Source of the DNA: Scyliorhinus canicula
Lineage: Eukaryota
Direction of reading: 5' to 3'
DNA length: 64,000 nt
Assembly (NCBI RefSeq): GCF_902713615.1
Contig: NC_052156.1
Coordinates: 151,220,804-151,284,803 of the forward strand
In this document: positions 47,021 through 64,000 of the stretch, piece by piece
Numbering within the stretch: the stretch's first letter is position 1
Layout of the letters: each line of letters opens with the position of its first letter
The notes under the pieces: generated by a model
The model's input: the letters and a program-made list of their open reading frames with translations, nothing else
The model's database searches: none
Told to the model about the DNA's origin: nothing
Translations under genes and position numbers: made by a program

Positions 47021-47389
47021 TGAGTTGCCCCATTGCCCCCTCCGCAGTCAACCTGCAAAAATGACCCCAGGGAAAGATGGTGCTGGCAAAACGGCACGTC
47101 AACTGGCAGCACAGATGTTCCCACCCACCCGGCCTTCTCTACCCTCCACCCTGGCAAAACCTGCCCACGGTTTCAGTCGGTTTTCTCAATGTCTATCACT
47201 TGTATTTACTGATCAGACATAATCCTGCAGTCCAAAAGCCAGTGCCTGACAAACATTTGTCTATTATTTTATATACTGAAGAGAAATACTTTGATCATGA
47301 AGTTAGCCCTCTGGGAAACAGCGGGTCTGCATGTTTACATTGGCCACCTCCTTTGAGGAGGTTGATCTTTATTTTCGATTGCAAATTGT

Positions 47390-47457
47390 CGGAATTGAAA
47401 CCGAAAGCAGAAGAGGAGGAAGTCCGGCTGCCTTCCTGCAAGGCTGAGGTGGGAAAG
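47390..47457 (+). promoter_or_regulatory. Candidate promoter and non-coding exon 1 of the B7-like gene: ISRE (GAAACCGAAAG, 47397-47407), ETS/PU.1 (GAGGAAGT, 47416-47423), donor AAG|GTATGT at 47457
   Basis: Motifs read directly in a non-repeat island, next to a CpG-rich block; exon 53560 starts with an acceptor, so it needs an upstream exon. Confidence 0.65.
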
Positions 47458-47479
47458 GTATGTTTATGAAATTTAACTT

Positions 47480-47830
47480 TCCGAAGGACAGGGTCGCATC
47501 GCCGGGGGGCGGGGGGGTTAAGGTTTTGTTTCGCGGGGGGTCTATTTTGCTTCAAGGTGAATCTTTAACGCGAACCGTCGGCTCTTCGAACTCTCACAAG
47601 TTGGTTTCACTTCAGCAATTCCCGCCCCGACAATAAGGAGCCGAACTGGGCCCAGGACCCCTCGGGACCCCCGGCCCGGGATTCACTCCACCTTCCCCGC
47701 CTCACACCGATTTAATGCCGGGGACCTCGGGCGGGAAGACGGCCTTTCCCCCCAAATTCCCGCCCTTTCCCCCGGTTGAAGCCTGGGCCGATTAACGGCT
47801 GCTCCCCCCCCCCCCCCCAGCCAAAATCAG
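47480..47830. promoter_or_regulatory. CpG-island-like block with second IRF motif (GGTTTCACTTC 47603-47613) and GC boxes
   Basis: Dense CG dinucleotides, CCCGCCCC; not recognisable as a repeat. Confidence 0.6.
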
Positions 47831-47944
47831 AAAGAATCATTTAAATACGGTACACGTGGTCATCCTTCAAGATCCTTTCCCAATTCAATTTCAACTATCA
47901 TTGGGCACCACTGCTAGTGAGCGCCACAGGAGGTAGAAGGAAGT

Positions 47945-48520
47945 GATGATGTGGAAATATCGGCGTTAGACTGGGGTGAGCGCAGTAAGAAGTCTGACCA
48001 GGTTAAAGTCCAAAAGGTTTTTTTCAAACACTAGGTCCATACGGTGCAACTGGAGAGAGGGATAATCACAGGTTAAAGAGGTATGAATTGTCTCAAACCA
48101 GGACAGTTTGGGGGGGGGGGGATTTCACAAGCCCAGGCCAGATGGTGCGGAAGGGGGGAGGTGAATGTAATGTGATAATAATCCTGGTTGAGGCTGTACT
48201 CATGTGTGCGGAACTTGGCTATCAGTTTCTGCTCTGCGATTCTGCATTGTTGCGCGTCCTGAAGGCTGTCTTGAAGAACGCTTTCCCAAAGATCAGAGCC
48301 TGAATGCCCTTGACTGCTAAAGTGTTCCCCGACTGGAAGGGAACATTCCTGCCTGGTGATTGTCGTGCGATATCTGTTTATCTGTTGTCGCAATGTCTGT
48401 ATGTGCCATGCCTCGTGACATTCTTTCCTGCATCGCATGAGGTAGACAATGTTGGCCGAGTGGCACGAGTATGTACTGCATAACGGGTAGGTGGTGGTCT
48501 CACGTTATTTCGGGCCAGAG
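47945..48520 (-). mobile_element. Penelope-like retroelement 3' part (GIY-YIG endonuclease remnant)
   Basis: QTLRQQINRYRTTITRQECSLPVGEHFSSQGH...IAEQKLIAKFRTHEYSLN. Confidence 0.8.
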
Positions 48521-48829
48521 TTTAGAGAACCACAACATTTAAATAGATTTTGGTTATGGGGTGCAGAAAGGCCCACCCCATTCTGTAAATTAATAAAAAT
48601 TTATTTACAGGATGTGGGTGTTGCTGGTTAGACCAGCATTTATTGTCCATCTTTGTTGCCCTTCAGAAGGTGGTGGTGAGCTGCCTTCTTGACAGTGGCG
48701 TGCAGAGGGGGGGGGGGGGGGGGGCGACGGTGCATTGGCCCCGGGCATCCATTGGATGGGGGCATCCAATCAGAGAAGGAAAAAAAAAAATGTTTTTTTA
48801 AACAAAATTTTTTTTTTTTTAAATTTTTT

Positions 48830-49050
48830 AAAAAAAATTTAGATTACCCAATTATTTTTTTCAATTAAGGGGCAATTTAGCGTGGCCAATCCACCTACTC
48901 TGCACATTTTTTGGGTTGTGGGGGCGAAACCAACGCAGACACGGGGAGAATGTGCAAACTCCACACGGACATTGACCCAGAGCCGGGATCGAACCTGGGA
49001 CCTCAGTTCCGTGAGGCGGTTGTGCTAACCACTAGGCCACCGTGCTGCCC
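48830..49050 (-). mobile_element. HE1-related SINE inserted in the hAT 5' subterminal region
   Basis: Reverse complement of the 1950-2177 family. Confidence 0.8.
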
Positions 49051-49680
49051 CAGAGAAGGAAATAAGATAGTAATTTTAAAATTTCAGCGGTGATAAATCA
49101 ATTTTTGGAGGCTCACCACACTGCAGAGGCAGTTGTTAGCCCTTTATTCCTTTAACATGGTGTACCCTTTCTGTCTAGAGAAAATGGTCCTTCTCCCCAT
49201 CCCCCCACATGCATGCGGATGATGTACGTGGTGCAACCATCAAAAGCAACAAGCAGACATGGCTGTTCGTTCCTGCATTTCCTCGAGTCATAACTCTTCT
49301 TTTCTTCAGCTTTTTGTGCATCTAGATTAGCTCTTTTACCTACTCATGTCAGTGAATAGCTCTAGAACAGGTGTAACTACGGTTTTTATAGGTTTTTTGG
49401 CGATATTCAATGAAATATTTACGTGGGATGTAGTAAGAGTGAAGCCTGGATGATCAGAGGACTGCTATGGCATTTAATCGCGGAATAGGAGACATTTATT
49501 CCTTAACATGCTAATATTCGAATACAGATACCACTAATTTGCAAGTCTATGATATAAATTGCACAAAATTATCAGTGGAGAATCAGTGTGAAATAATTTG
49601 ATACGAAGGAACAAAGAAATGAAATATGGTTTATCCGTCTGCAACTGACCGATTGTTTACCATTTTCTTCCCATTTTCTC

Positions 49681-52239
49681 ATGCGTCTTACGGTTTTTGA
49701 GATAGAAAATGAAATGTTACGAGTATTTCGTGTACAACCGAGTGGAGCACAGAACAGGGAAAAAAAGAGGGCCAGAGTCGAAGAAGAGTCCCATCAAAGA
49801 GGGGCATTAGATGCATGGATAAAAAGAAGTAAAGAAGTAGGAGAACCTGGAGAAGTAAAAGATGATGTGGGTGCAGAGAAGGATTTTTCTGATACGGATT
49901 CAGCTCGGTCAGAACATAATACTCTCTCTCCTCAGTCTCGTTGTCAGGATGATGATCCATGTGAAGAAAATAAAGAAGATTTTTGCATATTTTTGCAAAG
50001 AAGCGATTTTGGCTGTTTGAAGAAACCGATTCCAGATCATTTGAAGATGACAATATTACAACATGGCCCTGAAAGATATCAGAATAAAAGTGGTCCATTT
50101 GCTGAGAAGGATGGGAGATCATTTTCCAAACAGTGGTTTGATAAAGTTTCCACAAACGGAGAAATTGTGGAGAGAAAATGGTTGTTATACTCTCCATATC
50201 GGAAAGCATGCTACTGTTTTGTTTGCTTTTTGTTTTCAAAGGAGCATTTGTCGTCTGTGTTAAACTTTGGAAAGGAAGACGGTTTCTCCACTTGGAGAAA
50301 ATTAAATCAAACAATACCTGACCATGAAAAAAGCCCTTCTCATAGAGCTCACATGAGGGAATACCTGAACCTCGTAGTTCGACTCCATCATTCAACTACG
50401 ATAGATGCTGAACTTCAACAGCAAATGTCTGCTGAAAAGAAAAGATAGAAAGCTATAACTGAACGGATTGTCGAGGTTATATCCTTTCTGGCAAAACAGA
50501 ATCTGGCCTATCGTGGACATCGAGGAGAAGGAATATCTGGGTTATCAGAGCCAGGGGAGACAGTCAGTGAAAATACAGGAAACTTTCTAGCAACAATCAG
50601 ACTTTTGGCCAAATATGATGACATCTTAGCAAAACACTTGCAGAGAGGGAAAGAGAAACCAAAAAGTGTCACCTACTTGTCCAACAGAATTCAAAACGAA
50701 ATAATCAATCTTCTTGGTGAAACTGTCAAGAAAAATATAATTTCCGAAATTAAGGACGCAAAATATTTTAGCATAATGCTGGATTCAACTCCAGATATTG
50801 CCCATGAAGATCAGGTTTCTGAAATTCTGCGTTACGTTCATATTGATGAAAACAGAAAAGTAGAAATAAAGGAGACATTTCTGGGATTTTTTCAAGTCAA
50901 CAAGAAAGATGCAGTCAGCCTGGTAAATAAAATTCAGGAAAAATTGGAAGAAGACAAAATTTCCATGAATGACTGTCGTGGTCAAGCATATGATAACGCA
51001 GCAGTTATGGCTGGAGTGAGAGGAGGTGTTCAACAAAAAATTCTTGAAGTTAACCCAAAAGCTGTGTTTGTGAACTGCGAGAACCACAGCCTCAATTTGT
51101 CCTGTGTCCATGCAAGTGAGGTGCAACCTGTTGTTGTTACATTTTTTGGCATTCTAGAAAAACTCTTTACTTTTTTTTCTTCATCTACTTCTCGTTGGGA
51201 AGTGTTAAAATCATTTGTCACTCGGACTGTGAAAAGACAGTGTGACACAAGATGGAGTTCCAGCCATGATGCTGTGCAAGTAATCCACGAAGAGTGTGAC
51301 AACGTTATTGCAAGCCTTCAACACCTGCTGGAAGGAGAATTTTCAAGGGAAACTAAATCTGATGCAGGATCGCTACTGAACTCTATTCAACAGTTCCCGT
51401 TTATAGCTTTATTAAATTTTTGGTACTCAGTTTTATCATCAGTGGATAAAGTCTCAAAACGTTTGCAGGATCCGAAAATGGGGTTCCATGAAGCTTCTTG
51501 TGATCTGAGAGGACTTATTCATATCTTGAATTTGAAGAATGACGAAATTATCCACAATGCAATAGATTTAGCCAATGAATATTGTCAAAATTGGGGAATA
51601 CCAATTGCACGAACAAGGAGAAGAAGAATAATGCCTGGAGAGTCAGCAAGAGATAGTGTACTGACGGCGCAAGAAGAAATGAATAGAGTAATGGTAGAGA
51701 TTGTGAACAGATTAAAAACTGAAATTGAAGACCGCAGTGTCCGTCTTCAAAGACTCAGTGACCGATTTTCTTTTCTTCTGAACTTGAATTCAGGAGTGAT
51801 TGAAGATGAACAAGAAAGAGAGAAATTAAAAAAGGAATGTTCAGACTTTGCAAATTATTATGACAATGATGTGGTTGCAATTCAGTTATATGACGAAATT
51901 ATTGATTTTGTGATGCTCTTTCGAGCTGGAGGGAATAGAGTTCCCCCTGATCCTAAAGATGCTCTGGAGTCTTTACTGCAGTATGGGAGGGATGTCTTTC
52001 CGACGCTGTGTGTTTCATACAGATTACTGCTTACAATCGCATTTTCAGTCGCAAGCTGTGAAAGGTCATTTTCAAAACTGAAATTAATAAAAACATATCT
52101 GAGGTCTTCTATGTCACAGGAGCGACTGACCAACCTGGCTTTAATAAGCATTGAAAAAGAATTTCTCACAGCTGATGTAAAAAGTGAAGTAGTTCAGGTG
52201 TTTTGTGACAGGAGGTATCATTTGGGGAAAAGAACTTAA
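49681..52239 (+). pseudogene. hAT transposase (TTF-type Zn finger, DUF4371-like, catalytic core, hAT dimerisation domain), ~850 codons, one in-frame TAG at 50446-50448
   Basis: WLLYSP..KACYCFVC; FSIMLDSTPD; CRGQAYDNA; CENHSLNL; VASCERSFSKLKLIKTYLRSSMSQERL. ORFs 49681-50448 and 50605-52239 share a frame, and the 52 codons between them are open. Confidence 0.92.
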
Positions 52240-53562
52240 TAAATTTGATTGATTTATATTAAAATCGAATAAAGCATTTATTTCATGTTTCATCTGTGTT
52301 TATATATTCAAAATGTTTTCCTTTCTCATAATATTTCTCAGCATATTAGGCCTTATACTTGAGTCTTTGGGGCATACACTCAAGATTTGCCCCGGGCATC
52401 ACCAGACCTCTGCACGCCACTGCTTCTTGAACCGCCACAGTCCCTAAGCTGCTGTTAGGGAGGGAGTTCCAGGATTTTTCCCCAGTGACAGTGAAGGAAC
52501 GGCGATATATTTCCAAGTCAGGGTGGTGAGTGACTTGGGGGAACCTTCAGGTGGTGGGGTTCCCAAGGTATCTGCTGCTCTTGTCCTTCTGGATGGTAGC
52601 GGCCGTGGGTTTGGAAGGTGCTGTTTAAGGAACCTTAACGAGTTGCTGCAGTGCATCTTGTAGATGGTATGCACGGCTGCCACTGTTCGTTGGTGGTGGA
52701 GGGTTTGAATGTTTGTGGAAGAGAGAGCATCAAACGGAGTGCTTTGTCCTGGATGGTGTTTGAGTGTCTTGAGTGTTGTTGGAGCTGCACTTATCCAGGC
52801 ACGTGGAGAGTATTCCGTTACACTCATGGTGGACAGGCTTTGGAGGGGTTAAGAAGTGAGTTACTCGCCGTAGGATTCCTAGCCTGTGACTTGCCCTGGT
52901 AGCCACAGTATTAATATGGCTAGTCCAGTTCAGTTTCTGATCAATGATAACCCCCAGGAATTTGATTGTGGGAGATTCAGCGATGGTAATGCCATTGAAT
53001 GTCATGGGGGGGATGGTTAGATCCTCACTTATCGGAGATGGTCATTGCCTGGCACTTGTGTGGCGTGAATGTAACTTGCCACTTGTCAGCCCGAGCCTGG
53101 ATATTGTCCTGGTCGTGCTGCATTTGGACACAGACTGCTTCATTATCTGAGGAGTCGCGAATGGTGCTGATCATTGCGCAGTCATCTGCAAACATCCTCA
53201 TTTCTGACATGATTGCAAAGCGATCGAGACAGGGAAGTAAGTATTTAGGACTTCATTTCTGGAAGATAAAACGAAAAGGGAGGTGTGGTTTTCACGATAT
53301 TAAAGATCGGGGTAAAGATGGTCGGGAGAAAGGAACTGAGCTCAGATAATAAAGAAATAGGATCAGTTTGGATGGAGCAAGAAACAGAAATGGGGAGTGA
53401 CTCCTTCAACTTAAGGTACCAGTGAAATTTGGTGATGTGAAACTCCTATCATCTGCTCGGCTTAATATCAGTCCCTCTGGATATGTATTTGCCACAAATA
53501 TTGAATAGATGCTTGGAAAAGTAAACCAGTCACTCATTTTATGGGTTTTTATTTTTCAGGCA

Positions 53563-53614
53563 ATGGAGAATCTACTGTACATCACATTTCTGTTCTTCCA
53601 ACGGCTTATTTTCA
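53563..53614 (+). CDS. Leader/signal-peptide exon of B7-like gene: MENLLYITFLFFQRLIF (phase 1)
   Basis: Acceptor tttttatttttcag| (exon starts 53560), GCAATGG Kozak context, donor TTCA|gtaagt; A+GT joins the IgV exon in frame. Confidence 0.85.
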
Positions 53615-54928
53615 GTAAGTGCTTTGTCTTCATTCAGGGGCTTTCTGTTAGTATGTAATCCACTGTGTGGTTGGTCTCAAAATATGTAGCTGCCCTTAAG
53701 CCAATAGTTTTATCTTTAATGGTTATTCATTGATTTCATCACAAATGTTCTTTTACCAGAACATATGCCCAACAATACCATGAAGGATAACTGTCTGCGG
53801 TTGTGTCTCTTCCATTGTCCTCCCTACTTGCCTGTTCAGTCTTCATTTATTCCTTTTTTATTACTTTGGCTATTTTTACTTTGGACGGGATTTGCCAGCA
53901 GTTCGTGCTGGCGTCGAATTCTCCACTGTGGATTCCCCGGTGGAGGAGGGTGGGAACAACGGGAAGCCCCATTGACCGTGGCGGGGCGAGAAGATCTCGC
54001 CGCTAGCCAATGGCAGGCCGCCTCTGTCTTTTATATCTAAATAATTGGACCAGTTCCAATAATCCTTCTTGTATATTGTTTCTGCGTTAAACATTATCTA
54101 ATGAAGACTGTGAATAGGAATCTAAGAAAAATAATTAGTAAGAACGCAGTATAAATCCAGCTTGAACGGTGGAAAATAGGTTAAAAGATTAAACACAAGT
54201 TTGGAAGGAACTTGCATTTATATAGCAATATACCACTTATTTTCAGAAATCCCAAATACTGAAAGCCAAAGAGTTTTAAAGTGCAATCACTGCTCTCATG
54301 TGGACAAATGTGGCAGTCAATTTGTGCATGGCAAGATCCCACAAACCGTCCATGAAGTGAATGATCAGTTAATGATACTCATGATGGTGTCATTTGAAAG
54401 AGGAACATTGATTAAGCTAGCAGTGAACTCCCTGGACTGAATTTCATACTCTCCCTCTGGGGGTTTATAGGCAGGGGTGAGCAAGAAATAGCAAAAATAG
54501 GCTTCCCGCTGGATTTATACCTGCCTGGACCTCGCAGCAATTTTACGCTAAGGCAGGCAAAAGCTCAGATGGGCTGTCCATCTATGTCCCAATTAAGGCT
54601 GTTAAATGGCCAATTATTATTTTTTTAGTTCAGATTACCCAGTTATTTTTTTACAATTCACCTGGACTGCAGGCGCGGGGGAGGGCCTCCAACATAGACT
54701 CCCGTTTAACTTTGGGTGTCCCACCCCACCCCTGTTTTAAGGTCCAAATTCCTCCCTCCCCACCATGCCCGCTCCATCAACATCTCTGTCCCCCATTACC
54801 CAATCACCTTTTACCCAACTCCCAACCCGTCATGCTTCCTGTGTCTTCTAGAATCAAGCACAGTGTCTATGGTTCCTCCATGTTTGTCATTAAAATTATG
54901 TATTTTTTATGTCCTGTATTTTCATTAG

Positions 54929-55276
54929 GTGAAGGATCTTTCTCTCGGGTTAATGGAATCTTGGGTACAGACATATCACTGCCCTGCACCTTTCCTGTTG
55001 CAGTCAATTTCAATCTGCAGGATCTTGTCATTACCTGGCAGCGAACAGCCAGTTCAATTGTGGTTCACAGCTTCTACAATGAGGAAAACCATCCAGAGTA
55101 TCAAGACTCAGCATTCAGGGGACGGACCAAGCTATTTCCTCAAGAATTCCCCAGAGGGAATGCTGCTGTCAGACTGAAAGGAGCAACTATGTCGGATCAG
55201 GGGAACTACACCTGCTACGTGATTCAAGAGGATGGAAAAGGCTACATTGAGCATTTGGTGGAACTGCAATTGTACG
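54929..55276 (+). CDS. IgV exon of B7/butyrophilin-family type
   Basis: Acceptor ttttcattag|, donor TACG|gtgagt, phase 1-1. LPCTF, VITWQR, VVHSFY, YQDSAFRGRTKLF, GNAAVRL, DQGNYTC give the canonical V-set Cys/Trp plus B7-type motifs. Confidence 0.95.
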
Positions 55277-55769
55277 GTGAGTGCATGGATATCTCCCAGC
55301 AGTAGATAGATCACAGAACAGTCAACATTTTATTGAGGGAATTGTGCTTAGTCAGAGACTCCTGATCATCATCTGGAAAGTGCTGCAAAGTTTTGATGTA
55401 TTTAAAAGTTACTGTGAATGAGGAAGATTCAAGTGAATGGAGCTTGTTAGGTGTGTAGGATAAATATATTGAGCCACCTTTATGCTTTGCAGAAGGTGAC
55501 TTTCATAACCCACACAGGACCTATGAAGTGGCAGTAACAAAACTCTCCGTGAACCTCGCCGAATACGATCTCCCCCGTTAAAGTGGATTGAGAACCCTAA
55601 ACCATGTATCTTCTGTGTGAGGTTGGGTAGTTTGGGTACCGACAGGAGAGTCCAGCTGGGATCTTTTGTGCTGTGTAAATAATAGTTAGCGTAATAAACC
55701 TTTATTTCCTTTTAACAACTTGGTGTGGACTCCTTCATGGTCTACAAAACTGACGACAGGGGCTCAACT

Positions 55770-56800
55770 AGTTTGCTGTTGACACTGTTAATCTGTCGGT
55801 TCATCTACCACCACCTGATCATCAACTGTGAGGTGAGTGCCCCATATCAGAATGTGCCCAGAAGTCTGACCACTACCGTTGGCTACCGAGGTGTGTGTCT
55901 GTGCTGATGGACGATGGGGGTGACAGGTGTGCCGCGAAAACGATGGCATCCTTGGAGCTCTCCTCTGAGGTGTTCTCCTTGGGAGGCGCCTGTTGGGGAG
56001 GGGGCATCCCAGATGGGCCGACGCCGTCGGCTGCTTGTCCTGCGGAAGAATGGATGTGGTCAGTGGGAGGGATGGGTCAGTCTGACCGGTCATCTGGGTG
56101 GGGGCCAGTGGATCCTCACCTCTGCGCCGTACGGCAACTTCTACATTGGTGACAGATCTGTCCTCGGCCACACCCGCAACCTCCAGGACCCATTCCTCAT
56201 AGGAGGTGACGACTCTCATTCCGGCACCCCGCTGCCCGTCAGGGCCCTCTCCTATTGGTTGTGGGACAACGTTGCCTGCGGGGACACAGAGGGATGTCTT
56301 TAGCCACTTGTGTGGTTCGTTATAGGTGTAGGGGTTGGGGGGGCCATTGAGGAGATGGACTGTATGGGGGGGGAGGATTAGGGAGTATGGGGGGAGCGTG
56401 AGGCACATGGATGGCACTGCTGGACATGTGTGCTGGAACACGGGATGGTGCTGGGTGGAGGTGGTGCCAGGCTCATTCCCTTGGCGCGGGGTGAGGGGCA
56501 GTGCCAACTCACCCGAGCGGCACTGGGTGCTGGTCCTCCGGGTCACACTCCCCAAGCTGCCGGTCACTGCCACAGCTTCCCAAGCAACACTGGCTGCCCT
56601 GTAGCTGACCCTCCGAGACCCTCAGAGGAGCAGGGCATCCGGCCTGGTCTCGGGTGCTTCAAGTAATCTGCCCAAGTCTGCACCACTGAATTGTGGGGCT
56701 GGTTGACTCGGTGGCATGGCTGTGAGCTGAGTGGGGTTGACTGTGCAGGATCAGTTTAGGGGCTGCTCTTCCTTGTTAGCAGGGGGCTGGCGAGCGCGGT
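55770..56800 (-). mobile_element. Harbinger-associated Myb/SANT-like gene remnant
   Basis: VAVTGSLGSVTRRTSTQCR resembles the Myb_DNA-bind_5 helix; GC-rich and decayed. Confidence 0.55.
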
Positions 56801-56879
56801 CCCGGCGGGTCAGCTGACTGGACCATCATTTGCGGCGTGATGCTCGTGAGGCCTAGTTAAGTGGACCAATTAACATTTT

Positions 56880-58260
56880 ATAGTGATCTCCGGTTTTGTT
56901 TGGGCGGGTAAAACCCCGTGAGTGAAGACGGTGAAGATGGAGTGTGGCCGGGGGGGAGGGTGGGCTGGCGCTGCCGAACTTTAGCAACTATTACTGGGCG
57001 GCAAATATAGCCATGATTGGGAAGTGGGGGAAGGGTCGGTGTGGGAGCGAGTAGAGGCAGCATCTTGTAAGGACACATGTTTAGGGGACATTGATCAAGG
57101 CACCTCTGCCATTCTCGCCGGCCTGGTATTCCACAAGCCCGGTGGTAGTGGTGGCCCTGAGAGTCTGGGGCAGTGGAGGAAACGTGCGAGAGCGGAGGCA
57201 GCATCGGTTTGGGCTCCAATCTGTAGCAACCATCGGTTTGCCCCAGGGAGACATGATGGAGGGTTTCAGAGATGGCAGGGATCGGGAGGATGGGAGATTT
57301 GTTTATAGATGGTAGCTTCCCTGGTTTGAGGCAGTTAGAGGAGAAGTTTGAGTTGACGGGAGGGAATGGGTTTAGGTATCTGCAGATTCGGGACTTCTTG
57401 CGAAGGCAGGTTCTAACCTTCCCACTCCTACCGCCACGGGGGATACAAGATAGGGTCATTTCTAGAGTATGGGTGGGAGAGTCGCAGATATCTATAAAGA
57501 ATTCATGGAGTCAGAAGAAACGCAGACAGAGGAGCTAATGCACAAATGGGAGGAGGAGTTAGGGGGAGAGATAGAGGCAGGTCTCTGGGCGGATGCGTTA
57601 AGCAGGGTCAACACATCCACATCATGTGCCAGGCTCAGCCTGATACAATTTTAAAGTCGATCACCGGGCACACATGACGGTGGCCCGGATGAGCAAGTTT
57701 TCTGGGATAGAGGACAGATGTGCAAGGTGCGCGGGAGGGCAAGCGAACCATGGCCACATGTTTTGGGAATGTTCGAAGCTTAGGGGATTCTGGCAGGGGT
57801 TTGCGGAGGTGTTAAAAACAAAGGTGGCACCGAGTCCAGGGGCGGCGATTTTTGGAGTGTCGGAGGACCCCGGAGTCCAGGGGGCGAGAGATGCCGACGT
57901 CTTGGCCTTTGCTTCCCTGGTAGCCCGGAGACGGATACTGTTCGCATGGAGGGACTCGAAGCCCCCGAAATCACAGACCTGGGTCAATGACATGGCTGGC
58001 TTTCTCAGTCTTGAGAAAATCAAGTTCACTCTAAGAGGGTCAATGCTAGGGTTCGTCCGGAGATGGCAACCGTTTGTCGATGTCTTTAGAGAAAATTAAC
58101 TGTCAGCAGAGGTGGTGAGGGGAGGAGGGGTTTCGTCTAGATTACTGTTCGAGGAAGGTGGGAGGTAGAGGATCTTTGCACTATAGTATGTGTATAGTTG
58201 TTTGTATATGGTTTACTGTTACTGTTATAAAATCATAAATGCCTTAATAAAATATTTTAC
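56880..58260 (+). mobile_element. L1/Tx1 3' end
   Basis: GNGFRYLQIRDFLR; IEDRCARCAGG..NHGHMFWEC; AATAAA near 58246. Confidence 0.85.
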
Positions 58261-58353
58261 AACGAGAAACATTTTATAGTGGTATCGGCTGAGAGTCGGG
58301 AAACCGACAGCGGTTCCTGCTCGCTACCTCACTGAGAAACCTTTTTGTAAAAT

Positions 58354-58377
58354 TGTGGTGAATGTAACTCACACTGT

Positions 58378-58414
<37 letters not shown>

Positions 58415-58661
58415 CCGTACGATTGTAAGCGCAGTTGCGTTTCCCGACCACTAGGGGGAATATCTCTGGGAATGCTTAGGAGTTTGTACAGGGCTCCACC
58501 CACGGCTCCTCCCCCTGGACTGCTGTATAAATATCGATGCCCAGAGCCAGCCGACCAGTTCATCGAGAGTTCAACGTGTAACAGGCTGGCTCTGTAGTAA
58601 GTAGATTAAAACCACTGTTCATATCTCAAAGCACGTGTCTAGTGAATTGATGGTCTCATCA
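58354..58661 (+). mobile_element. Solo LTR with internal (TA)n
   Basis: TGTGGTGAAT...CATCA termini; 5-bp TSD AAAAT on both sides; TATAAA inside; homologous to 63326-63606. Confidence 0.8.
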
Positions 58662-59094
58662 AAAATCGCTCCCTATACCTGTGTCCCCTTTCCGACATAT
58701 AACCTAGGAGGTCGATTAGCAGAGCACATAGCTTTTTGGGTGAAGTCCTCCGAGCTTTTTTAGAATTGATGTTAGTAAAGGTTGAACGATGTCCAGTCTT
58801 GCCTCCTTAATGAGTGCTGCAGACATTTGAAGTGGCAATCAATTATTTAGTGAGGTTCCAGATGCCGTTCCTTATCCTTGCTTCAGTTCCTTTAACAAGG
58901 CGACAGCTTACTCTAAACACCAACTAATTTGGTATTTCAGCTCAAACCTCCACCGTGGTCACATCAGGGGATAGTTAATGCCTGGACTTGCTGCTAAAAA
59001 TAGTTCATGTCACAGGCAGACTGAGTGATCTTTGTTTGTCAGTTCTTAATGGAGTCATTTAACCTTAATGTCCTGATTATTCCATATCTCCTAG

Positions 59095-59256
59095 AAAAAC
59101 CACTGGTTCCTGGAACTGATGATAAAAATCCAGCTTTGGAAAGAAAAAATCCAGAATTTCTAATGGCAATCTCAGGTGGAATTCTGATTGTTTTAATTAC
59201 AGTCGGAGTTGGACTTTGCAGAAAGCAAAAGACAAAGTCACAATATCCTGACGAGG
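59095..59256 (+). CDS. Stalk + transmembrane + juxtamembrane exon: (E)KPLVPGTDDKNPALERKNPEFLMAISGGILIVLITVGVGLCRKQKTKSQYPDE
   Basis: Acceptor ccatatctcctag|, donor GAGG|gtgagt, phase 1-1; ~21 hydrophobic residues followed by a basic stop-transfer stretch. Confidence 0.9.
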
Positions 59257-60271
59257 GTGAGTAAAGTGTTTAGAAATGTTAGGCACTTACCATGTGACTT
59301 GGATAAACATAAATACAAATTTGATACAAATCTACAACAATCGAATTACAAAATTCATTGGAAATTTTCTTGAATATTTACGGTTACGGTTTCTTTACCT
59401 GGAAGTGAATTTGCTGCTTTCTATCTCCTATTCTGGTTACACTTAAAAACTACGGATGAGATCTTCTGAGACTTCATGCTCGTGGGTTCTTCTGATCCTT
59501 CGACGACGCAGCTCCGCCGAGGGTTTCCCAGCGACGTAGGGTAGATTCAGTGGGAAATCCCATTGATAGCTGTGGGACCAGAAGATCCAGCCCACAGTGG
59601 GCCACCTCCAGCTGCCGAGAAACACATCGCGAGGGAGACCAGAGAAACCCCTATGTTGATGTGTAGATATAAAATGTGTATTGGTACAAGATATGTGATA
59701 TGATTAAGTTCTGTAAATGTATGATCTGTTATGTGATTGTTAACTTATACTAAGTATAACGCAACCTGCCTTAATACTACGAGCCCAGCTTTAACATGAA
59801 GTAGTCTTTCTTTGGACCAAGATTAATAGATTGCGAGGTTAAATTTTCCAAATTTCCACTTAAAGCATTGGCCCTTCAGCACTGGGAATTGCACATTTTA
59901 AAAAATATCGCCCAAGTATTATGTCAAGAGTCAGAGGCTGAATTTACTGATTTTTGAGAGACCCTTCTCCAGGGGAAGCTCCACTGTGGGCTCGATTCAG
60001 CTCGTAACACCAGAACTGCGATATGTCTTAGTATCAGTAAGAATGGAGCTACTTGACACTGATGCTCAGTTTGTGTTTGAATAGAGCTTGAAACGGCTTC
60101 AGACTCACTGAGTAACAAACTGTTACACGATATAAATCATAGAACCACTGCTTTACAATTGTATTCTCAATCATTGACTGCGGATTGTGGAAAATCTTGT
60201 CAGATTTGTTGTAATTTAATCTAATCTAATATATTCTGTACAGTGGCTTGAATGTTTAGTCCCCAGTGGGG

Positions 60272-60630
60272 GTGAGCACTGATGTAGGTAGGTGGGAGTG
60301 AGCACTGAGGTAGGTAGGTGGGGGTGAGCACTGGCCAGCATGCCAGTCTCCCAGCACCATCCCACCACCCAACAGCAGCCGGGCAGGTCAGCACTCCAGG
60401 AGGCTTCGAGGCCTTCCCCGTCTGCCTCGCTTCGAGGCCTTCCCCGTCTGCCTCGCTTCGAGGCCTTCCCCGTCTGCCTCGCTTAGAGGCCTTCCCCGCC
60501 TGCCTCGTTTAGAGGCCTTCCCCGCCTGCCTCATTTAGAGACCTTTCCCGCCTGCCTCGCTTAGAGGCTTCCCCCGCCTTTCTTGCTTAGAAGCCCCGCC
60601 TGCCTCACTTAGAGGCCTTCCCCGCTGCCT
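60272..60630. repeat. Two adjacent 26-bp minisatellites (~2.5 copies at 60272-60335; ~9 copies at 60403-60630)
   Basis: Units gtgagcactgaggtaggtaggtgggg and gcttcgaggccttccccgtctgcctc. Confidence 0.9.
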
Positions 60631-61019
60631 AGCTTCAGATGCAGCCACGGGTTGTCCTTTAGTGATTCCTCCCCACGCCCCACAATGGTGACATGTCTTC
60701 TACGAGTTTTTCTATAATATGAACTACTACATGTTGGAGAGAGGGCACATCCATCTTTGAACCCCTGCTCCCTCACTTACTAGAAAGGTCAGACTGCTGC
60801 TTCCGGCATGGTAGAGGGCCTCCTACTGACCTTTCAGCTTCATGGGCCTATCATGCATCCTTAATTGGATGGTGACCCTATCCTCTGGTCTTTAATTGGC
60901 TAATTCGAGGAAATTCACATCTGATTGACTGTTCCTGGACATTGCCGACCTCTAACCGTATTTGACCCTGACTGCCGGATCCCAAATGTGGCGTACTTGG
61001 GTTTTAAGAAGGCTTTTTT

Positions 61020-61232
61020 CTAAAATTTAGAGTACCCAATTATTTTTTTTCCAATTAAGGGGCAATTTAGCATGGCCAATCCACCTAACCAGCACATCTT
61101 TTGGGCTGTGGGGGTGAAACTCACGCAGACACGGAGAGAATGTGCAAATTCCAAGATGGACCAGGGCTGGGATTCGAACCCGAGTCCTCAGCACCGTAGT
61201 CCCAGTGCTAACCACTGCACCACTGTGCTGCC
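61020..61232 (-). mobile_element. HE1-related SINE
   Basis: Reverse complement of the 1950-2177 family. Confidence 0.8.
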
Positions 61233-61234
61233 CT

Positions 61235-62500
61235 TTTAAGCAGGCTTTTGACAAGGACTCACACAGGAGATTAGCAAAATTAGAGCCCATGGGTTTTGGA
61301 GTATTATACTGGCATGGATTAAGAATTGGCTAATGCACAGAAAAGAGAGTAGGAATAAATAGGTTATTCACAGGATGGCAGGTTGTGACTAGTGAGCTAC
61401 CTCAAAAGGATCAGTGCCCAGGCCCCTGCTATTCGCAATCTACATCAATGGTTTGGATATGTGGAACAAATGCAATATTTCCAAGTTTGCTGATGACACA
61501 AAACTAGATAGGGATGTGAATTGTGAGGAGGATTTAAAGAGGCTTCAAGGAGATTTAGACAGACTGAGTGGGCAAGTACATGGCAGATGGAATATAATGT
61601 GAAAAATGTGAAGTTTTCCACTTTCATATGGAAAACAGAAATGCAGAGTATTTCTTAAACGGCAAGTGATTGGGAAGTGTTGATGTTCAAAGCCTTGTCC
61701 TTGTTCTAAGTCACTGAAACCTAACATGCTGTGCAGCAAGCAAGTAGGAAAGCAAATGATACGTTGGCCTCTGTTGTAAGAGGATTTGAGTACAGGAGTA
61801 AAGAAGTTTTCCTGTAATCCCCCTTTGGTGAGACCATACCTGATGCATTGTATACAGTTTGGTATCCTTACCTCAGAAAATATATGTTTGCTATAGGGCC
61901 AACGCAATAAAGGTTCACCAGACTGTATATGGATTGTCCTGTGAGGACAAACTGGGATCACTGGGCCTATGGCCTCTGGAATTTTGAAGAATAAGAGGTG
62001 GTCCCATTAAAGCATATATGGCTGGATAATCTAGTTGCAGGAAGAATGATTTTCCTGGTTGGGAGGTTTCCAGATGCAGGGGACACAATCTCAAAATGAG
62101 AGTTAGGTCATTTAGGGACTGGTTTAGCTCACCAGGCTAAATCGCTGGTTTTTCAAGCAGGCCAGCAGCACGGTTCGATTCCCGTACCAGCCTCCCCGGA
62201 CAGGCGCCGGAATGCGGCGACTAGGGGCTTTTCACAGTAACTTCATTGAAGCCGACTCGTGACAATAAGCGATTTTCATTTTCATTTCATTATGACTGAT
62301 GAGGAATTTCACCACTCAAAGGATGGCGAATCTTTGGAATTCTCTACTGCAGAGGGCTGCAGAAGCTTTGTCATTGAATATATTCAGGACAGAGATTGCT
62401 AGATCTCTAGATATTAGATGAATCAAGACACATGGGGATAATGCAGGATAGTGGCATTGAAGTAGAAGCTCGGCCATGATCTAGTTGAATGGTGGAGCAG
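61235..62500 (+). mobile_element. Old CR1 3' remnant interrupted by a SINE at 62115-62291
   Basis: LLFAIYINGLD...ISKFADDTKL. Confidence 0.75.
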
Positions 62501-62585
62501 GCTCACGTGATTTCCTATTATACCAGCAGTAAGGAGAATACCTGGAAAGAAGCAGACACTAACGCCAGGTTATTTTGTTTTTCAG

Positions 62586-62615
62586 AAATGCCTTTACTGG
62601 GAGATGTTGTAGAAG
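62586..62615 (+). CDS. Candidate 30-nt cytoplasmic microexon: (E)MPLLGDVVE(G)
   Basis: Acceptor tattttgtttttcag|, donor GAAG|gtaatg, phase 1-1; in frame with the TM exon. Confidence 0.6.
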
Positions 62616-63325
62616 GTAATGAGCTGAGTTCTGTTTTGTGTTCTTCGATTCTAGGATATATAATGCTACTACATCTGACTACAGTGATAAAATCTGTTTG
62701 AATCAATTTTTACAAAAACCCTACCTGATCCTCTGAGAACAGTGATGACATGTTTGATTTTGTAATTTAGCCAGGAAAAAATTGAATTCTTTTCATTAAA
62801 TAATTTGGAACTTGATTGCCATATATTAAAGGAGATTAAAAACTATAGACATATGTCATTTTTTAGCTCTGTATATTGGGAAAATATTTTTAAAAATCAT
62901 TAGCTTATCAAGTATATTCCATTCAGAAAACATGAACAATCTAATAGGTATCTGCATTTCAATTTTCTCCTAAAGCCACCCGCCCACATTAATGGGGCAA
63001 TTAGAAACTGCTTTAAAACCGTGATAATGTCATCTGGATGTTCCTCCCCACACAGTACATTGATGAGAAATCTGACTTGGTTTTCATGCTTCCTTTAGAT
63101 CTTCCAAAAATATATTTGGCACACCCTTCTGGTGAGTTTCTTGGGGTGTAACCATATTCTGCTGAAACACTCCTCCGAGTAATTTCATCTTGCACGTCTA
63201 GCACCCAGATATAAATTAGGACTCAACTGGTGATCCAAACCTGATAACGTTTTCTCACACGTTCAATTTGACAGCATGGTTATGAAACCGTGATTCTCTT
63301 TCTGTGCTGAATAACACGGTAAAGG

Positions 63326-63606
63326 TGATGTGACCATCAATTCACACGACACGTGGTTGGAAGTGAACAGTGGTTTTAATAGTCTTTCAACAGAGCCTGC
63401 CTGTGACGAGATGAACTGGCAGGCAGGCTCACGACTGCCAAGCTTTATACTTCCGGTTAGTGGGCAGAGCCAAGGGTGGAGTCCAGTACAAACTCCTCAT
63501 CTCCCCTATGGGCAGAGCCATGCAACTGCTTGTATACCGAGCTTACATAGACACAATACATCATATATAATAACAGTGTGAATTACACGGACTGTGATTC
63601 ACCACA
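63326..63606 (-). mobile_element. Solo LTR, same family as 58354-58661, opposite orientation
   Basis: TGATG...TCACCACA termini; 5-bp TSD AAAGG (63321-63325, 63607-63611). Confidence 0.85.
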
Positions 63607-63611
63607 AAAGG

Positions 63612-64000
63612 AATGGAAGCTTTAGAAGCAGGATTAGACCATTTGGTCCTTTGACCCTGATCAGCCATTCAATAAATCCTTTTTGGTCTGGCTGTGGTCT
63701 CAACTCCACTTTCCTATTCGGCCCCCATGACATTATTGTCTATCAAAACTCTATCTAACTCCACCTTCAATAAATTCAATGACCCAGACTCCACAGCTTT
63801 CTGGTGGCGAGAATTCTACAGATTAAACACCCTCCGAGAGAAGAAAATTCTACTTGTCTTGGTCTTAAAAGCAAGACATCTTATTCTTAAACTGGGGTTC
63901 CAATTCCAGCCTTCACCACAGAGAGGAAACATTCTTCTGATTAAATCCCCTCAGGATCTTGTATGTTTCTGTAAGATCATCTCTCATTCTTCTAAACGCC
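63612..64000 (-). mobile_element. CR1 3' remnant
   Basis: Similar to the CR1 3' ends at 21530-21900. Confidence 0.65.

What the first reader, a model, noticed from the sequence alone, without database searches (positions are those of the whole stretch)
47397..62615. Single-IgV B7/butyrophilin-fold membrane protein gene
Leader (53563-53614), IgV (54929-55276), stalk+TM (59095-59256) and microexon (62586-62615) splice in frame through phase-1 junctions (seen). The V domain has B7/BTN hallmarks (VHSFY, YQD..FRGRT.LF, GNA..RL, D.G.YTC). A non-coding first exon followed by a leader exon with 52 coding nt resembles the CD274/PD-L1 layout (established, from memory). I cannot assign an orthologue; it may be a cartilaginous-fish-specific B7 family member.
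Basis: partly seen in the sequence, partly recalled or inferred. Interest (0 to 1): 0.78.

Follow-up and report, generated by a model that had tools for sequence, protein, structure and literature searches.

The report
Membrane-spanning NLR with B7-type outer domain
The exons are real and expressed, but they are only the front end of a larger catshark gene that joins an outer B7-type immunoglobulin domain, through the membrane, to an inner NACHT-LRR (NOD-like receptor) sensor; all cartilaginous fishes keep this layout, and I found no paper describing it.

Summary
Observation confirmed. The leader (53563-53614), IgV (54929-55276), stalk+TM (59095-59256) and 30-nt microexon (62586-62615) splice in frame. 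Spliced contigs from four independent studies carry the leader>IgV and IgV>TM joints, a non-coding exon 1 (at least 47343-47457) and the microexon. No IgC exon exists.

Interpretation partly right. The IgV is of B7 type, nearest VTCN1/B7-H4 and CD276/B7-H3. But the gene does not end in the window. The microexon donor is used, and the RNA contigs do not run on into 62616-64000.

The public catshark model (993 aa, spanning 35.6 kb) continues into NACHT, winged-helix, HD2, LRRs and a helical tail. The same signal-IgV-TM-microexon-NACHT-LRR layout is annotated in sharks, rays and a chimaera, partly by independent pipelines. It also stands on one 3341-nt skate mRNA contig. In Callorhinchus all exons lie within 11.4 kb. 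Salamanders have IgV-TM-NACHT relatives.

In skate the same donor also splices to a short terminal exon, giving a 214-aa single-IgV protein.

The microexon carries a conserved [DE]xxxL[LI] sorting motif.

The scan earlier noted a different transmembrane NLR elsewhere in this genome (s1-270727). I found no paper on either.

The parts
47343..47457 (+). Non-coding exon 1 (5' UTR). The 5' limit is only the end of the longest RNA contig; the true start may lie further upstream. Donor is GTATGT at 47458.
   Evidence: The X3 contig carries 113 letters before 53558, and the last 30 of them equal 47426-47455. No ATG in this stretch. Sequence read.
53560..53614 (+). Leader exon. ATG at 53563 in a good Kozak context (GCAATGG), 52 coding nt, ends in phase 1. 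Encodes the hydrophobic signal peptide MENLLYITFLFFQRLIFS.
   Evidence: The joint 53614>54929 appears in 4 runs.
54929..55276 (+). IgV exon (348 nt, phase 1-1). B7-H3/B7-H4-type V-set domain with Cys37, Trp54, Cys113 and an NYT sequon.
   Evidence: Pfam V-set 5e-12. PDB matches VTCN1 and CD276. Cys, Trp and Cys are invariant in the orthologues aligned. Covered by RNA contigs.
59095..59256 (+). Stalk, single transmembrane helix (FLMAISGGILIVLITVGVGL) and basic stop-transfer CRKQKTK. Ends with the acidic residues of the sorting motif.
   Evidence: The joint 55275/6>59094/5 appears in 4 runs. Hydropathy finds one strong TM in the five relatives scanned, four with an IgV before the NACHT, and the TM segment aligns across orthologues.
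62586..62615 (+). 30-nt juxtamembrane microexon (E)MPLLGDVVE, phase 1-1. It completes a conserved [DE]xxxL[LI] motif. Its GT donor leads out of the window to the NACHT exon.
   Evidence: RNA loose ends after 59256 match it. A 30-nt microexon stands at the same place in Callorhinchus. The motif is present in 19 of 19 chondrichthyan sequences.
62616..64000 (+). Start of the intron that leads to the NACHT exon, which lies beyond the window. The public model P0005 reads 62616-62696 through as coding, and this is not supported by RNA.
   Evidence: X1 and X4 are not listed as holders of this stretch, X2 holds 0.00 and X3 0.06. P0005 residues 188-224 map to 62585-62695, and the rest of P0005 has no match in the window.

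Best explanation
The window holds the 5' end of a small-spotted catshark gene for a type I transmembrane NOD-like receptor.

Shown:
- The IgV is of B7-H3/B7-H4 type.
- There is one TM helix followed by basic residues, so the IgV faces outside or into a lumen and everything after the TM is cytosolic.
- The microexon donor is used.
- In the public catshark model and in all chondrichthyan orthologues I retrieved, the next exon is a large NACHT exon. It is followed by WH, HD2, about five ribonuclease-inhibitor-type LRRs and a conserved three-helix tail.
- Walker A (GDAGVGKS) and Walker B (LDGLDEF) are intact.

Inferred (about 0.4): the protein is a membrane-anchored sensor in which the outer IgV binds a ligand on a cell or microbe. 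Clustering of the IgV then drives NACHT oligomerisation on the cytosolic face. The conserved acidic dileucine motif, encoded across the TM exon and microexon, routes the receptor by clathrin adaptors between the surface and endosomes.

Also likely (about 0.5): as in skate, the same donor can splice to a short terminal exon, giving a roughly 200-aa single-IgV membrane protein without the NLR part.
For: - Exons and splicing: (four runs from four studies, GT..AG joints), plus 21 and 22.
- IgV type.
- No IgC.
- Gene continues: the P0005 model is 993 aa over 35.6 kb, and only its first 224 residues map to the window.
- RNA contigs do not run on past 62615.
- V-set+NACHT(+LRR) models occur in 8 sharks, plus 5 rays and Callorhinchus. 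My own Pfam scans confirm this for six of the models and for the skate mRNA contig's product.
- Independent annotations: chiPu_0008549 and scyTo_0014132.
- One 3341-nt skate mRNA contig encodes IgV-TM-microexon-NACHT-LRR, 982 aa.
- The gene tree follows the species tree, indicating one orthologue per species.
- The Callorhinchus exons, including a 30-nt microexon and a 1749-nt NACHT exon, lie in 11.4 kb on one strand.
- The junction xLLxxxx|DAIQxYKEY is conserved.
- The dileucine motif is in 19 of 19 chondrichthyans and in Pleurodeles.
- NLR part: nearest solved structures by sequence are NOD2, NLRP3, NLRP9 and NLRP5. The LRR+tail model has pLDDT 88 and best matches the NLRX1 C-terminal fragment.
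- Short isoform in skate.
Against: - I could not see the catshark microexon>NACHT joint itself. The NACHT exon lies outside the window, no DNA was served for it.
- The 2089-nt catshark contig X1 extends 1514 nt past the microexon, but only its first 30 letters were shown. It could be either the long or a short isoform.
- The public catshark model has an odd 34-aa insertion from read-through, so it is imperfect.
- No known effector domain (CARD, PYD, BIR, B30.2) was found, so the downstream signalling is unknown.
- The direction of signalling is pure inference.
- The full-length AlphaFold model is weak over the nucleotide-binding domain (mean pLDDT 63).
Confidence: 0.85

Rival explanations
1. 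Inside-out sensor, working like butyrophilin 3A1. The cytosolic NACHT-LRR detects an intracellular danger or microbial signal. Its oligomerisation changes the spacing or conformation of the outer B7-type IgV, which lymphocyte receptors then read. The architecture is the same as in the best explanation, but signal flow is reversed.
For: - The IgV belongs to the B7/butyrophilin group, whose members are ligands for lymphocyte receptors (family role from established knowledge).
- BTN3A1 couples a cytosolic sensor domain to an IgV ectodomain (established knowledge).
- NACHT-LRR modules are classically intracellular sensors.
- The IgV varies between individuals, with 6 of 7 differences non-synonymous.
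Against: - No receptor is known and nothing was tested here.
- There is no B30.2 domain.
- The conserved endocytic motif fits a receptor that is internalised at least as well.
Confidence: 0.2
2. In catshark the main product is the reader's short single-IgV B7-like membrane protein. The long IgV-NLR form is rare or absent in this species.
For: - Skate makes a 214-aa short form from the same donor. Five cluster members sit on Logan contigs, and the two I fetched come from two different runs.
- Whale shark has a 190-aa 'VTCN1-like' model.
- The catshark contigs seen were not shown beyond the microexon.
Against: - The only catshark protein holding this IgV in the collections searched is the 993-aa NLR model; the search limited to 108-345 aa found only the whale shark model.
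- Both Scyliorhinus species have long models, one from an independent pipeline.
- The NLR part stays 49-93% identical across chondrichthyans with intact ATPase motifs, so it is under selection as part of this gene.
Confidence: 0.1
3. Annotation artefact: two neighbouring genes, a small B7-like gene and an NLR lacking its first exons, are wrongly merged by gene predictors.
For: - The catshark model contains an unsupported read-through insertion.
- One S. torazame isoform runs into a legumain prodomain at its C-terminus, showing that such merging does occur here.
Against: - A single spliced 3341-nt skate mRNA contig carries both parts in one ORF.
- The junction position is identical in the chondrichthyan models aligned, which come from two kinds of pipeline.
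- No stop or terminal exon follows the microexon in the window, and its donor is used.
- The NLR part has no N-terminal domain or start of its own.
- The locus is compact, 11.4 kb, in Callorhinchus.
Confidence: 0.03

Closest known systems
VTCN1 (B7-H4) and CD276 (B7-H3), B7 family
   Same: The IgV sequence is closest to these among solved structures: VTCN1 64-81 bits, CD276 57-75 bits per domain. Shared features are the signal peptide, type I topology, phase-1 Ig exon, and motifs such as VHSFY, FRGRT.LF, GNA.L.L and D.GNYTC.
   Different: No IgC domain. The cytoplasmic side is a full NACHT-WH-HD2-LRR module rather than a short tail. Orthology to either gene is not established.
Vertebrate NLRs (NOD2, NLRP3, NLRP9, NLRP5; NLRX1 for the C-terminal part)
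   Same: NACHT with intact Walker A and B, NOD2-type winged helix, NLRC4-type HD2 and ribonuclease-inhibitor-type LRRs. The LRR plus three-helix tail best matches the NLRX1 C-terminal fragment 3UN9.
   Different: No CARD, PYD or BIR at the N-terminus. In their place are a signal peptide, an extracellular IgV and a TM helix, so the protein is predicted to be membrane-anchored, not soluble. It has only about five LRRs.
AjNLRC4 of the sea cucumber Apostichopus japonicus (PMC8699970)
   Same: Reported as a membrane pattern-recognition receptor with an extracellular Ig domain and an intracellular NACHT. The Ig domain binds microbes, and the receptor is internalised and drives phagocytosis. This is the only published Ig+TM+NACHT protein I found.
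   Different: It is from an echinoderm, has two TM segments and no LRRs, and its Ig domain is not reported as B7-type. Homology with the shark gene was not tested, so convergence is likely.
Butyrophilins (BTN3A1 and relatives)
   Same: A B7-type IgV outside, one TM helix, and a ligand-sensing domain inside. The IgV profile scores BTN3A1 at 63 bits.
   Different: Butyrophilins have IgV-IgC and a B30.2 domain. This protein has IgV only and NACHT-LRR.
Another transmembrane NLR noted by this scan in the same genome (s1-270727)
   Same: An Ig ectodomain and a TM helix fused to NACHT-LRR, also reported as conserved in sharks and rays.
   Different: That gene is described with a V-C1 ectodomain and a CARD. 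It lies on another piece of the genome and I did not examine it.

Membership tests
B7 / butyrophilin family | N-terminal V-set Ig domain with the canonical Cys-Trp-Cys core, most similar to B7 IgV domains | tested here: met
   Pfam V-set 5e-12. Best PDB matches are VTCN1 and CD276, then BTN3A, MOG and PD-L1. C37, W54 and C113 are invariant in the ten sequences aligned.
B7 / butyrophilin family | Membrane-proximal IgC domain (IgV-IgC ectodomain) | tested here: not met
   No Ig-like frame in 55277-59094. RNA joins the IgV exon directly to the TM exon in four runs. The chondrichthyan orthologues aligned also lack it.
B7 / butyrophilin family | Type I membrane protein (signal peptide, single TM) | tested here: met
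   Hydrophobic leader, one strong TM and a basic stop-transfer.
B7 / butyrophilin family | One-to-one orthology with a named B7 gene (VTCN1, CD276 and others) by tree and synteny | tested here: inconclusive
   Only score ranking was obtained. The rest of the window is transposon-rich and gives no synteny. No IgV tree with named B7 genes was built.
B7 / butyrophilin family | Binds a CD28-family or other lymphocyte receptor | not testable with these tools
   Needs binding assays.
NLR (NACHT-LRR) family | Central NACHT NTPase with Walker A and B | tested here: met
   Pfam NACHT scores 1e-21 to 1e-25 in the nine relatives I scanned. GDAGVGKS and LDGLDEF are present in P0005. This part lies outside the window.
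NLR (NACHT-LRR) family | C-terminal leucine-rich repeats | tested here: met
   Pfam LRR_6. The AlphaFold model of P0005:770-993 shows five beta-alpha repeats with pLDDT 88, and its fold matches NLR and RNH1 LRRs.
NLR (NACHT-LRR) family | N-terminal effector domain (CARD, PYD or BIR) and cytosolic location | tested here: not met
   The N-terminus is signal peptide, IgV and TM. No death-fold domain was found by Pfam.
AjNLRC4-type membrane Ig-NACHT receptors (echinoderm) | Extracellular Ig, TM and intracellular NACHT | tested here: met
   The architecture is shared (PMC8699970 abstract). Common descent was not tested. AjNLRC4 lacks LRRs and has two TM segments.

The most novel reading that the evidence does not exclude
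The gene represents an ancient jawed-vertebrate receptor class, present in chimaeras, sharks, rays and salamanders with a relative in the coelacanth. In it, an NLR is wired through the membrane to a B7-type IgV. It would work inside-out, like butyrophilin 3A1: cytosolic sensing by NACHT-LRR is reported to lymphocytes by the outer IgV. Alternative splicing at the microexon would switch between a plain B7-like ligand and the sensor-coupled form. This would link the B7/butyrophilin and NLR systems directly.
Probability: 0.15. Interest if true: 0.95.

Novelty: new variant of a known kind. Interest (0 to 1): 0.8.

Why it matters
NLRs are textbook cytosolic sensors, and B7 proteins are textbook cell-surface ligands. 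Here one conserved gene joins the two through a membrane helix.

The gene has been kept as a single orthologue across all three cartilaginous-fish lineages, whose split is by established knowledge more than 400 million years old. Relatives occur in salamanders. This would add a membrane-anchored class to vertebrate NLRs.

It also offers a natural test of whether NACHT oligomerisation can be driven from, or reported to, the outside of the cell. In addition, it suggests that exon shuffling between phase-1 Ig exons and phase-1 NLR exons built new receptors early in jawed vertebrates.

In public records the gene sits under names such as NLRC3-like, NOD1-like and NLRP-like, which say nothing of its outer domain. 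Six literature searches found no description of it.

Tried and rejected
- IgC exon: I looked for one in the 3.8-kb intron between the IgV and TM exons using stop-to-stop frames. I found only LINE/RT debris.
- Synteny: the rest of the window is almost all transposon ORFs.
- Read-through in the public model: P0005 reads 62616-62696 through as coding. The RNA-like runs X1, X2 and X4 do not hold that stretch, and seven other shark models lack it, so I treat it as a model error or a minor isoform.
- DNA beyond the window: none was served for the catshark or cloudy catshark locus. The microexon>NACHT joint in this species therefore stays unseen.
- Axolotl locus: the look-up gave only a 600-kb gene range.
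- Full-length AlphaFold model of the S. torazame orthologue: mean pLDDT 63, poor over the nucleotide-binding domain. I used it only to note a folded IgV, a TM helix and a confident WH-HD2-LRR-tail.
- Legumain prodomain: the match at the end of S. torazame isoform X2 is most likely a run-on into a neighbouring gene.
- ISRE-like motif at 47397-47407: 3 matches in the window against 1.76 expected, so not significant alone.
- First word-based protein search: it found only one relative, the whale shark 190-aa model, because of its length window.
Full report
**1. The observation**

I read the four claimed coding pieces and joined them in a script. They are 52, 348, 162 and 30 nt long. The three internal exons are flanked by AG and GT. 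The leader exon starts at 53560 behind an AG, with the ATG at 53563. The junctions are all phase 1, and the product reads MENLLYITFLFFQRLIFS / EGSFSRVNG...LQLY / EKPLVPG...QYPDE / EMPLLGDVVE.

Pfam scores the second piece as V-set (E 5e-12). A stop-to-stop scan of 55277-59094 finds no Ig-like frame, only LINE-type debris.

**2. Expression and splicing**

The IgV exon is held by many small contig sets of one organism. I laid four of them, from four different studies, on 53400-59399.

- All four show contigs with the joints 53614>54929 and 55275/6>59094/5, with GT..AG ends.
- None has depth over non-repeat intron, so these contigs are spliced RNA.
- The letters before 53558 in run X3 match window 47426-47455 exactly. 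The sequence there continues AG|GTATGT. A non-coding exon 1 therefore spans at least 47343-47457, and it holds no ATG.
- The letters after 59256 in X1 and X3 are the microexon 62586-62615 with two or three base differences from the window (GDGVE instead of GDVVE; MHLL in X1).

**3. The gene does not end here**

- The microexon ends in a GT donor.
- RNA runs X1 and X4 are not listed as holders of 62616-64000. X2 holds none of its words and X3 holds 6%.
- The X1 contig nevertheless goes on for 1514 nt after the microexon. The transcript must therefore splice out of the window.

An exhaustive HMMER search with the IgV returned a 100%-identical protein of 993 aa (P0005). A source names it 'NOD1-like [Scyliorhinus canicula]'. 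It is encoded over 35.6 kb of assembly GCA_902713615.2. Only its first 224 residues map to the window. The rest is a linker, NACHT (GDAGVGKS, LDGLDEF), winged helix, HD2, LRRs and a helical tail.

That model reads 62616-62696 through as coding and adds seven residues before the NACHT exon. RNA does not support this. Seven other shark models go straight from xPLLGDxVE to DAIQxYKEY.

**4. Is the fusion real?**

The evidence is comparative and, in one relative, direct.

- Using the first 197 residues as query, V-set+NACHT(+LRR) proteins appear in eight sharks of both superorders.
- Using the NLR part as query, the same architecture appears in five rays and in the chimaera Callorhinchus milii, and the cluster look-up adds the skates Leucoraja and Amblyraja.
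- Two of the models (chiPu_0008549, scyTo_0014132) come from a pipeline other than NCBI's.
- A single 3341-nt Logan contig from a skate RNA run encodes the whole 982-aa protein in one frame, with V-set, TM, microexon, NACHT, HD2 and LRR. At that length it can only be spliced mRNA.
- A maximum-likelihood tree of the full proteins follows the species tree: chimaera, then sharks and rays as sister groups. This indicates one orthologue per species.
- In Callorhinchus I mapped the exons on fetched DNA (L004). Leader, IgV (342 nt matched), stalk+TM (183), a 30-nt microexon, a 1749-nt NACHT exon and three LRR/tail exons all lie on one strand within 11.4 kb.

I therefore regard the IgV-TM-NACHT-LRR gene as established for chondrichthyans and strongly inferred for this catshark locus. 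The catshark microexon>NACHT joint itself remains unseen, because no DNA beyond the window was served.

**5. A short isoform**

A cluster of 214-aa proteins from skate RNA contigs (P0048; L001, L002) is identical in layout up to the last base of the microexon. It then continues into a short exon, GSPSSLTAHSAA-stop, and about 800 nt of 3' UTR. There is no GT at the boundary, so this is splicing and not intron retention.

Aligned with the long skate mRNA, the two diverge exactly at the microexon donor. So in skate one gene makes both a single-IgV membrane protein and the full NLR.

The whale shark 190-aa 'VTCN1-like' model may be similar, or it may be truncated. The whale shark NLR part sits on a separate 25-kb contig. 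Whether catshark makes a short form is open.

**6. What kind of parts**

- *IgV.* Among solved structures the single sequence is nearest VTCN1 (64 bits) and CD276 (57 bits per domain). A profile of 16 orthologues gives VTCN1 81, CD276 72-75, BTN3A1 63, MOG 62 and PD-L1 59.
- *Topology.* Hydropathy finds one strong TM helix in each of the five relatives scanned, and the aligned orthologues show basic residues after it. This predicts a type I topology.
- *Sorting motif.* The end of the TM exon plus the microexon encode [DE]xxxL[LI] (EEMPLL here). The motif is found at the same position in all 19 chondrichthyan sequences checked and in Pleurodeles. By established knowledge this is the consensus acidic dileucine signal for clathrin adaptors. 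Its function here is inferred.
- *NLR part.* It is nearest NOD2, NLRP3, NLRP9 and NLRP5 by sequence.
- *C-terminus.* An AlphaFold model of the last 224 residues (pLDDT 88) shows five LRRs and a three-helix tail. Its best fold match is the NLRX1 C-terminal fragment 3UN9.
- *Effector domain.* No CARD, PYD, BIR or B30.2 is detected.

**7. Beyond cartilaginous fishes**

The next-best relatives of the NLR part, at 30-33% identity, are from Latimeria and salamanders.

- Pleurodeles proteins from two annotations have IgV (twice)-TM-NACHT, with the same LVITWQRS motif.
- The axolotl models P0125 (IgV-TM) and P0179 (TM-NLR) share the same TM and juxtamembrane residues. They lie on the same chromosome-scale record and look like one gene split into two models.
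- The Latimeria protein begins with a TM segment before its NACHT.
- A Lissotriton protein shares the C-terminal helical tail.
- Single-IgV proteins of lungfish and Ascaphus, named CD276-like, are 52-54% identical in the IgV.

The family therefore seems older than cartilaginous fishes. Orthology was not tested rigorously.

**8. How it probably works**

The architecture and topology are shown. The mechanism is inferred.

My preferred reading, at about 0.4, is an outside-in membrane receptor. The IgV binds a ligand, clustering nucleates the NACHT ring on the cytosolic face, and the dileucine motif takes the receptor into endosomes. This matches what is reported for the only published Ig-TM-NACHT protein, sea cucumber AjNLRC4 (PMC8699970).

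The main mechanistic rival, at about 0.2, is inside-out signalling of the butyrophilin 3A1 kind.

**9. Novelty**

Six full-text searches and three papers on fish and shark NLRs gave no description of a vertebrate NLR with an Ig ectodomain. Public records name the gene NLRC3-like, NOD1-like or NLRP-like.

This scan had already noted a different transmembrane NLR (V-C1 ectodomain, CARD-NACHT-LRR) on another piece of the same genome (s1-270727). I did not examine it.

I class the present gene as a new variant of a known kind.

Noticed in passing
window 54974-55229 (IgV exon) and 62586-62615: RNA contigs differ from the window at 7 sites in the IgV exon. Six are non-synonymous (V43D, N46T, R56Q, S60L, D77G, E118G). 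Run X2 carries two haplotype contigs that differ at 5 sites within 52 nt. The microexon also varies (V/G, P/H). This hints that the ectodomain is polymorphic.
   Followed up: partly
window 49681-52239, + strand (intron 1): Two long ORFs (255 and 544 aa) of a hAT-type transposase (Pfam DUF4371 and hAT dimerisation domain). They appear intact and lie in the same orientation as the gene.
   Followed up: partly
window 57600-58100 and 58400-58800 (intron 3): LINE/RT-derived and other repeat pieces are covered at high depth (200-800) in all four RNA runs. These repeat families are evidently transcribed somewhere in the genome.
   Followed up: no
window 47397-47407: An ISRE-like GAAACCGAAAG lies inside exon 1, since the longest RNA contig reaches 47343. 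There are three matches in the window against 1.76 expected, so it is not significant alone. Another note of the scan (s1-249363) places a promoter at 47390-47830, which is mostly exon 1 and intron 1.
   Followed up: partly
L001, L002 (short) and L003 (long), skate RNA contigs: One microexon donor is spliced either to a short terminal exon (214-aa single-IgV protein) or to the NACHT exon (982-aa NLR).
   Followed up: yes
P0152, residues 986-1079 (S. torazame isoform X2): A legumain prodomain match sits at the C-terminus of one predicted isoform. It is probably a run-on into a neighbouring legumain gene, which would give a synteny marker.
   Followed up: no
P0125, P0177, P0179 (axolotl); P0178, P0197 (Pleurodeles): Salamander relatives have IgV-TM-NACHT. 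In axolotl the IgV-TM and TM-NLR parts are annotated as separate, overlapping models on one chromosome.
   Followed up: partly
P0005:770-993 (model m7066a210dc4f): The short LRR plus conserved three-helix tail best matches the NLRX1 C-terminal fragment (3UN9). The tail is conserved from chimaera to newt.
   Followed up: partly
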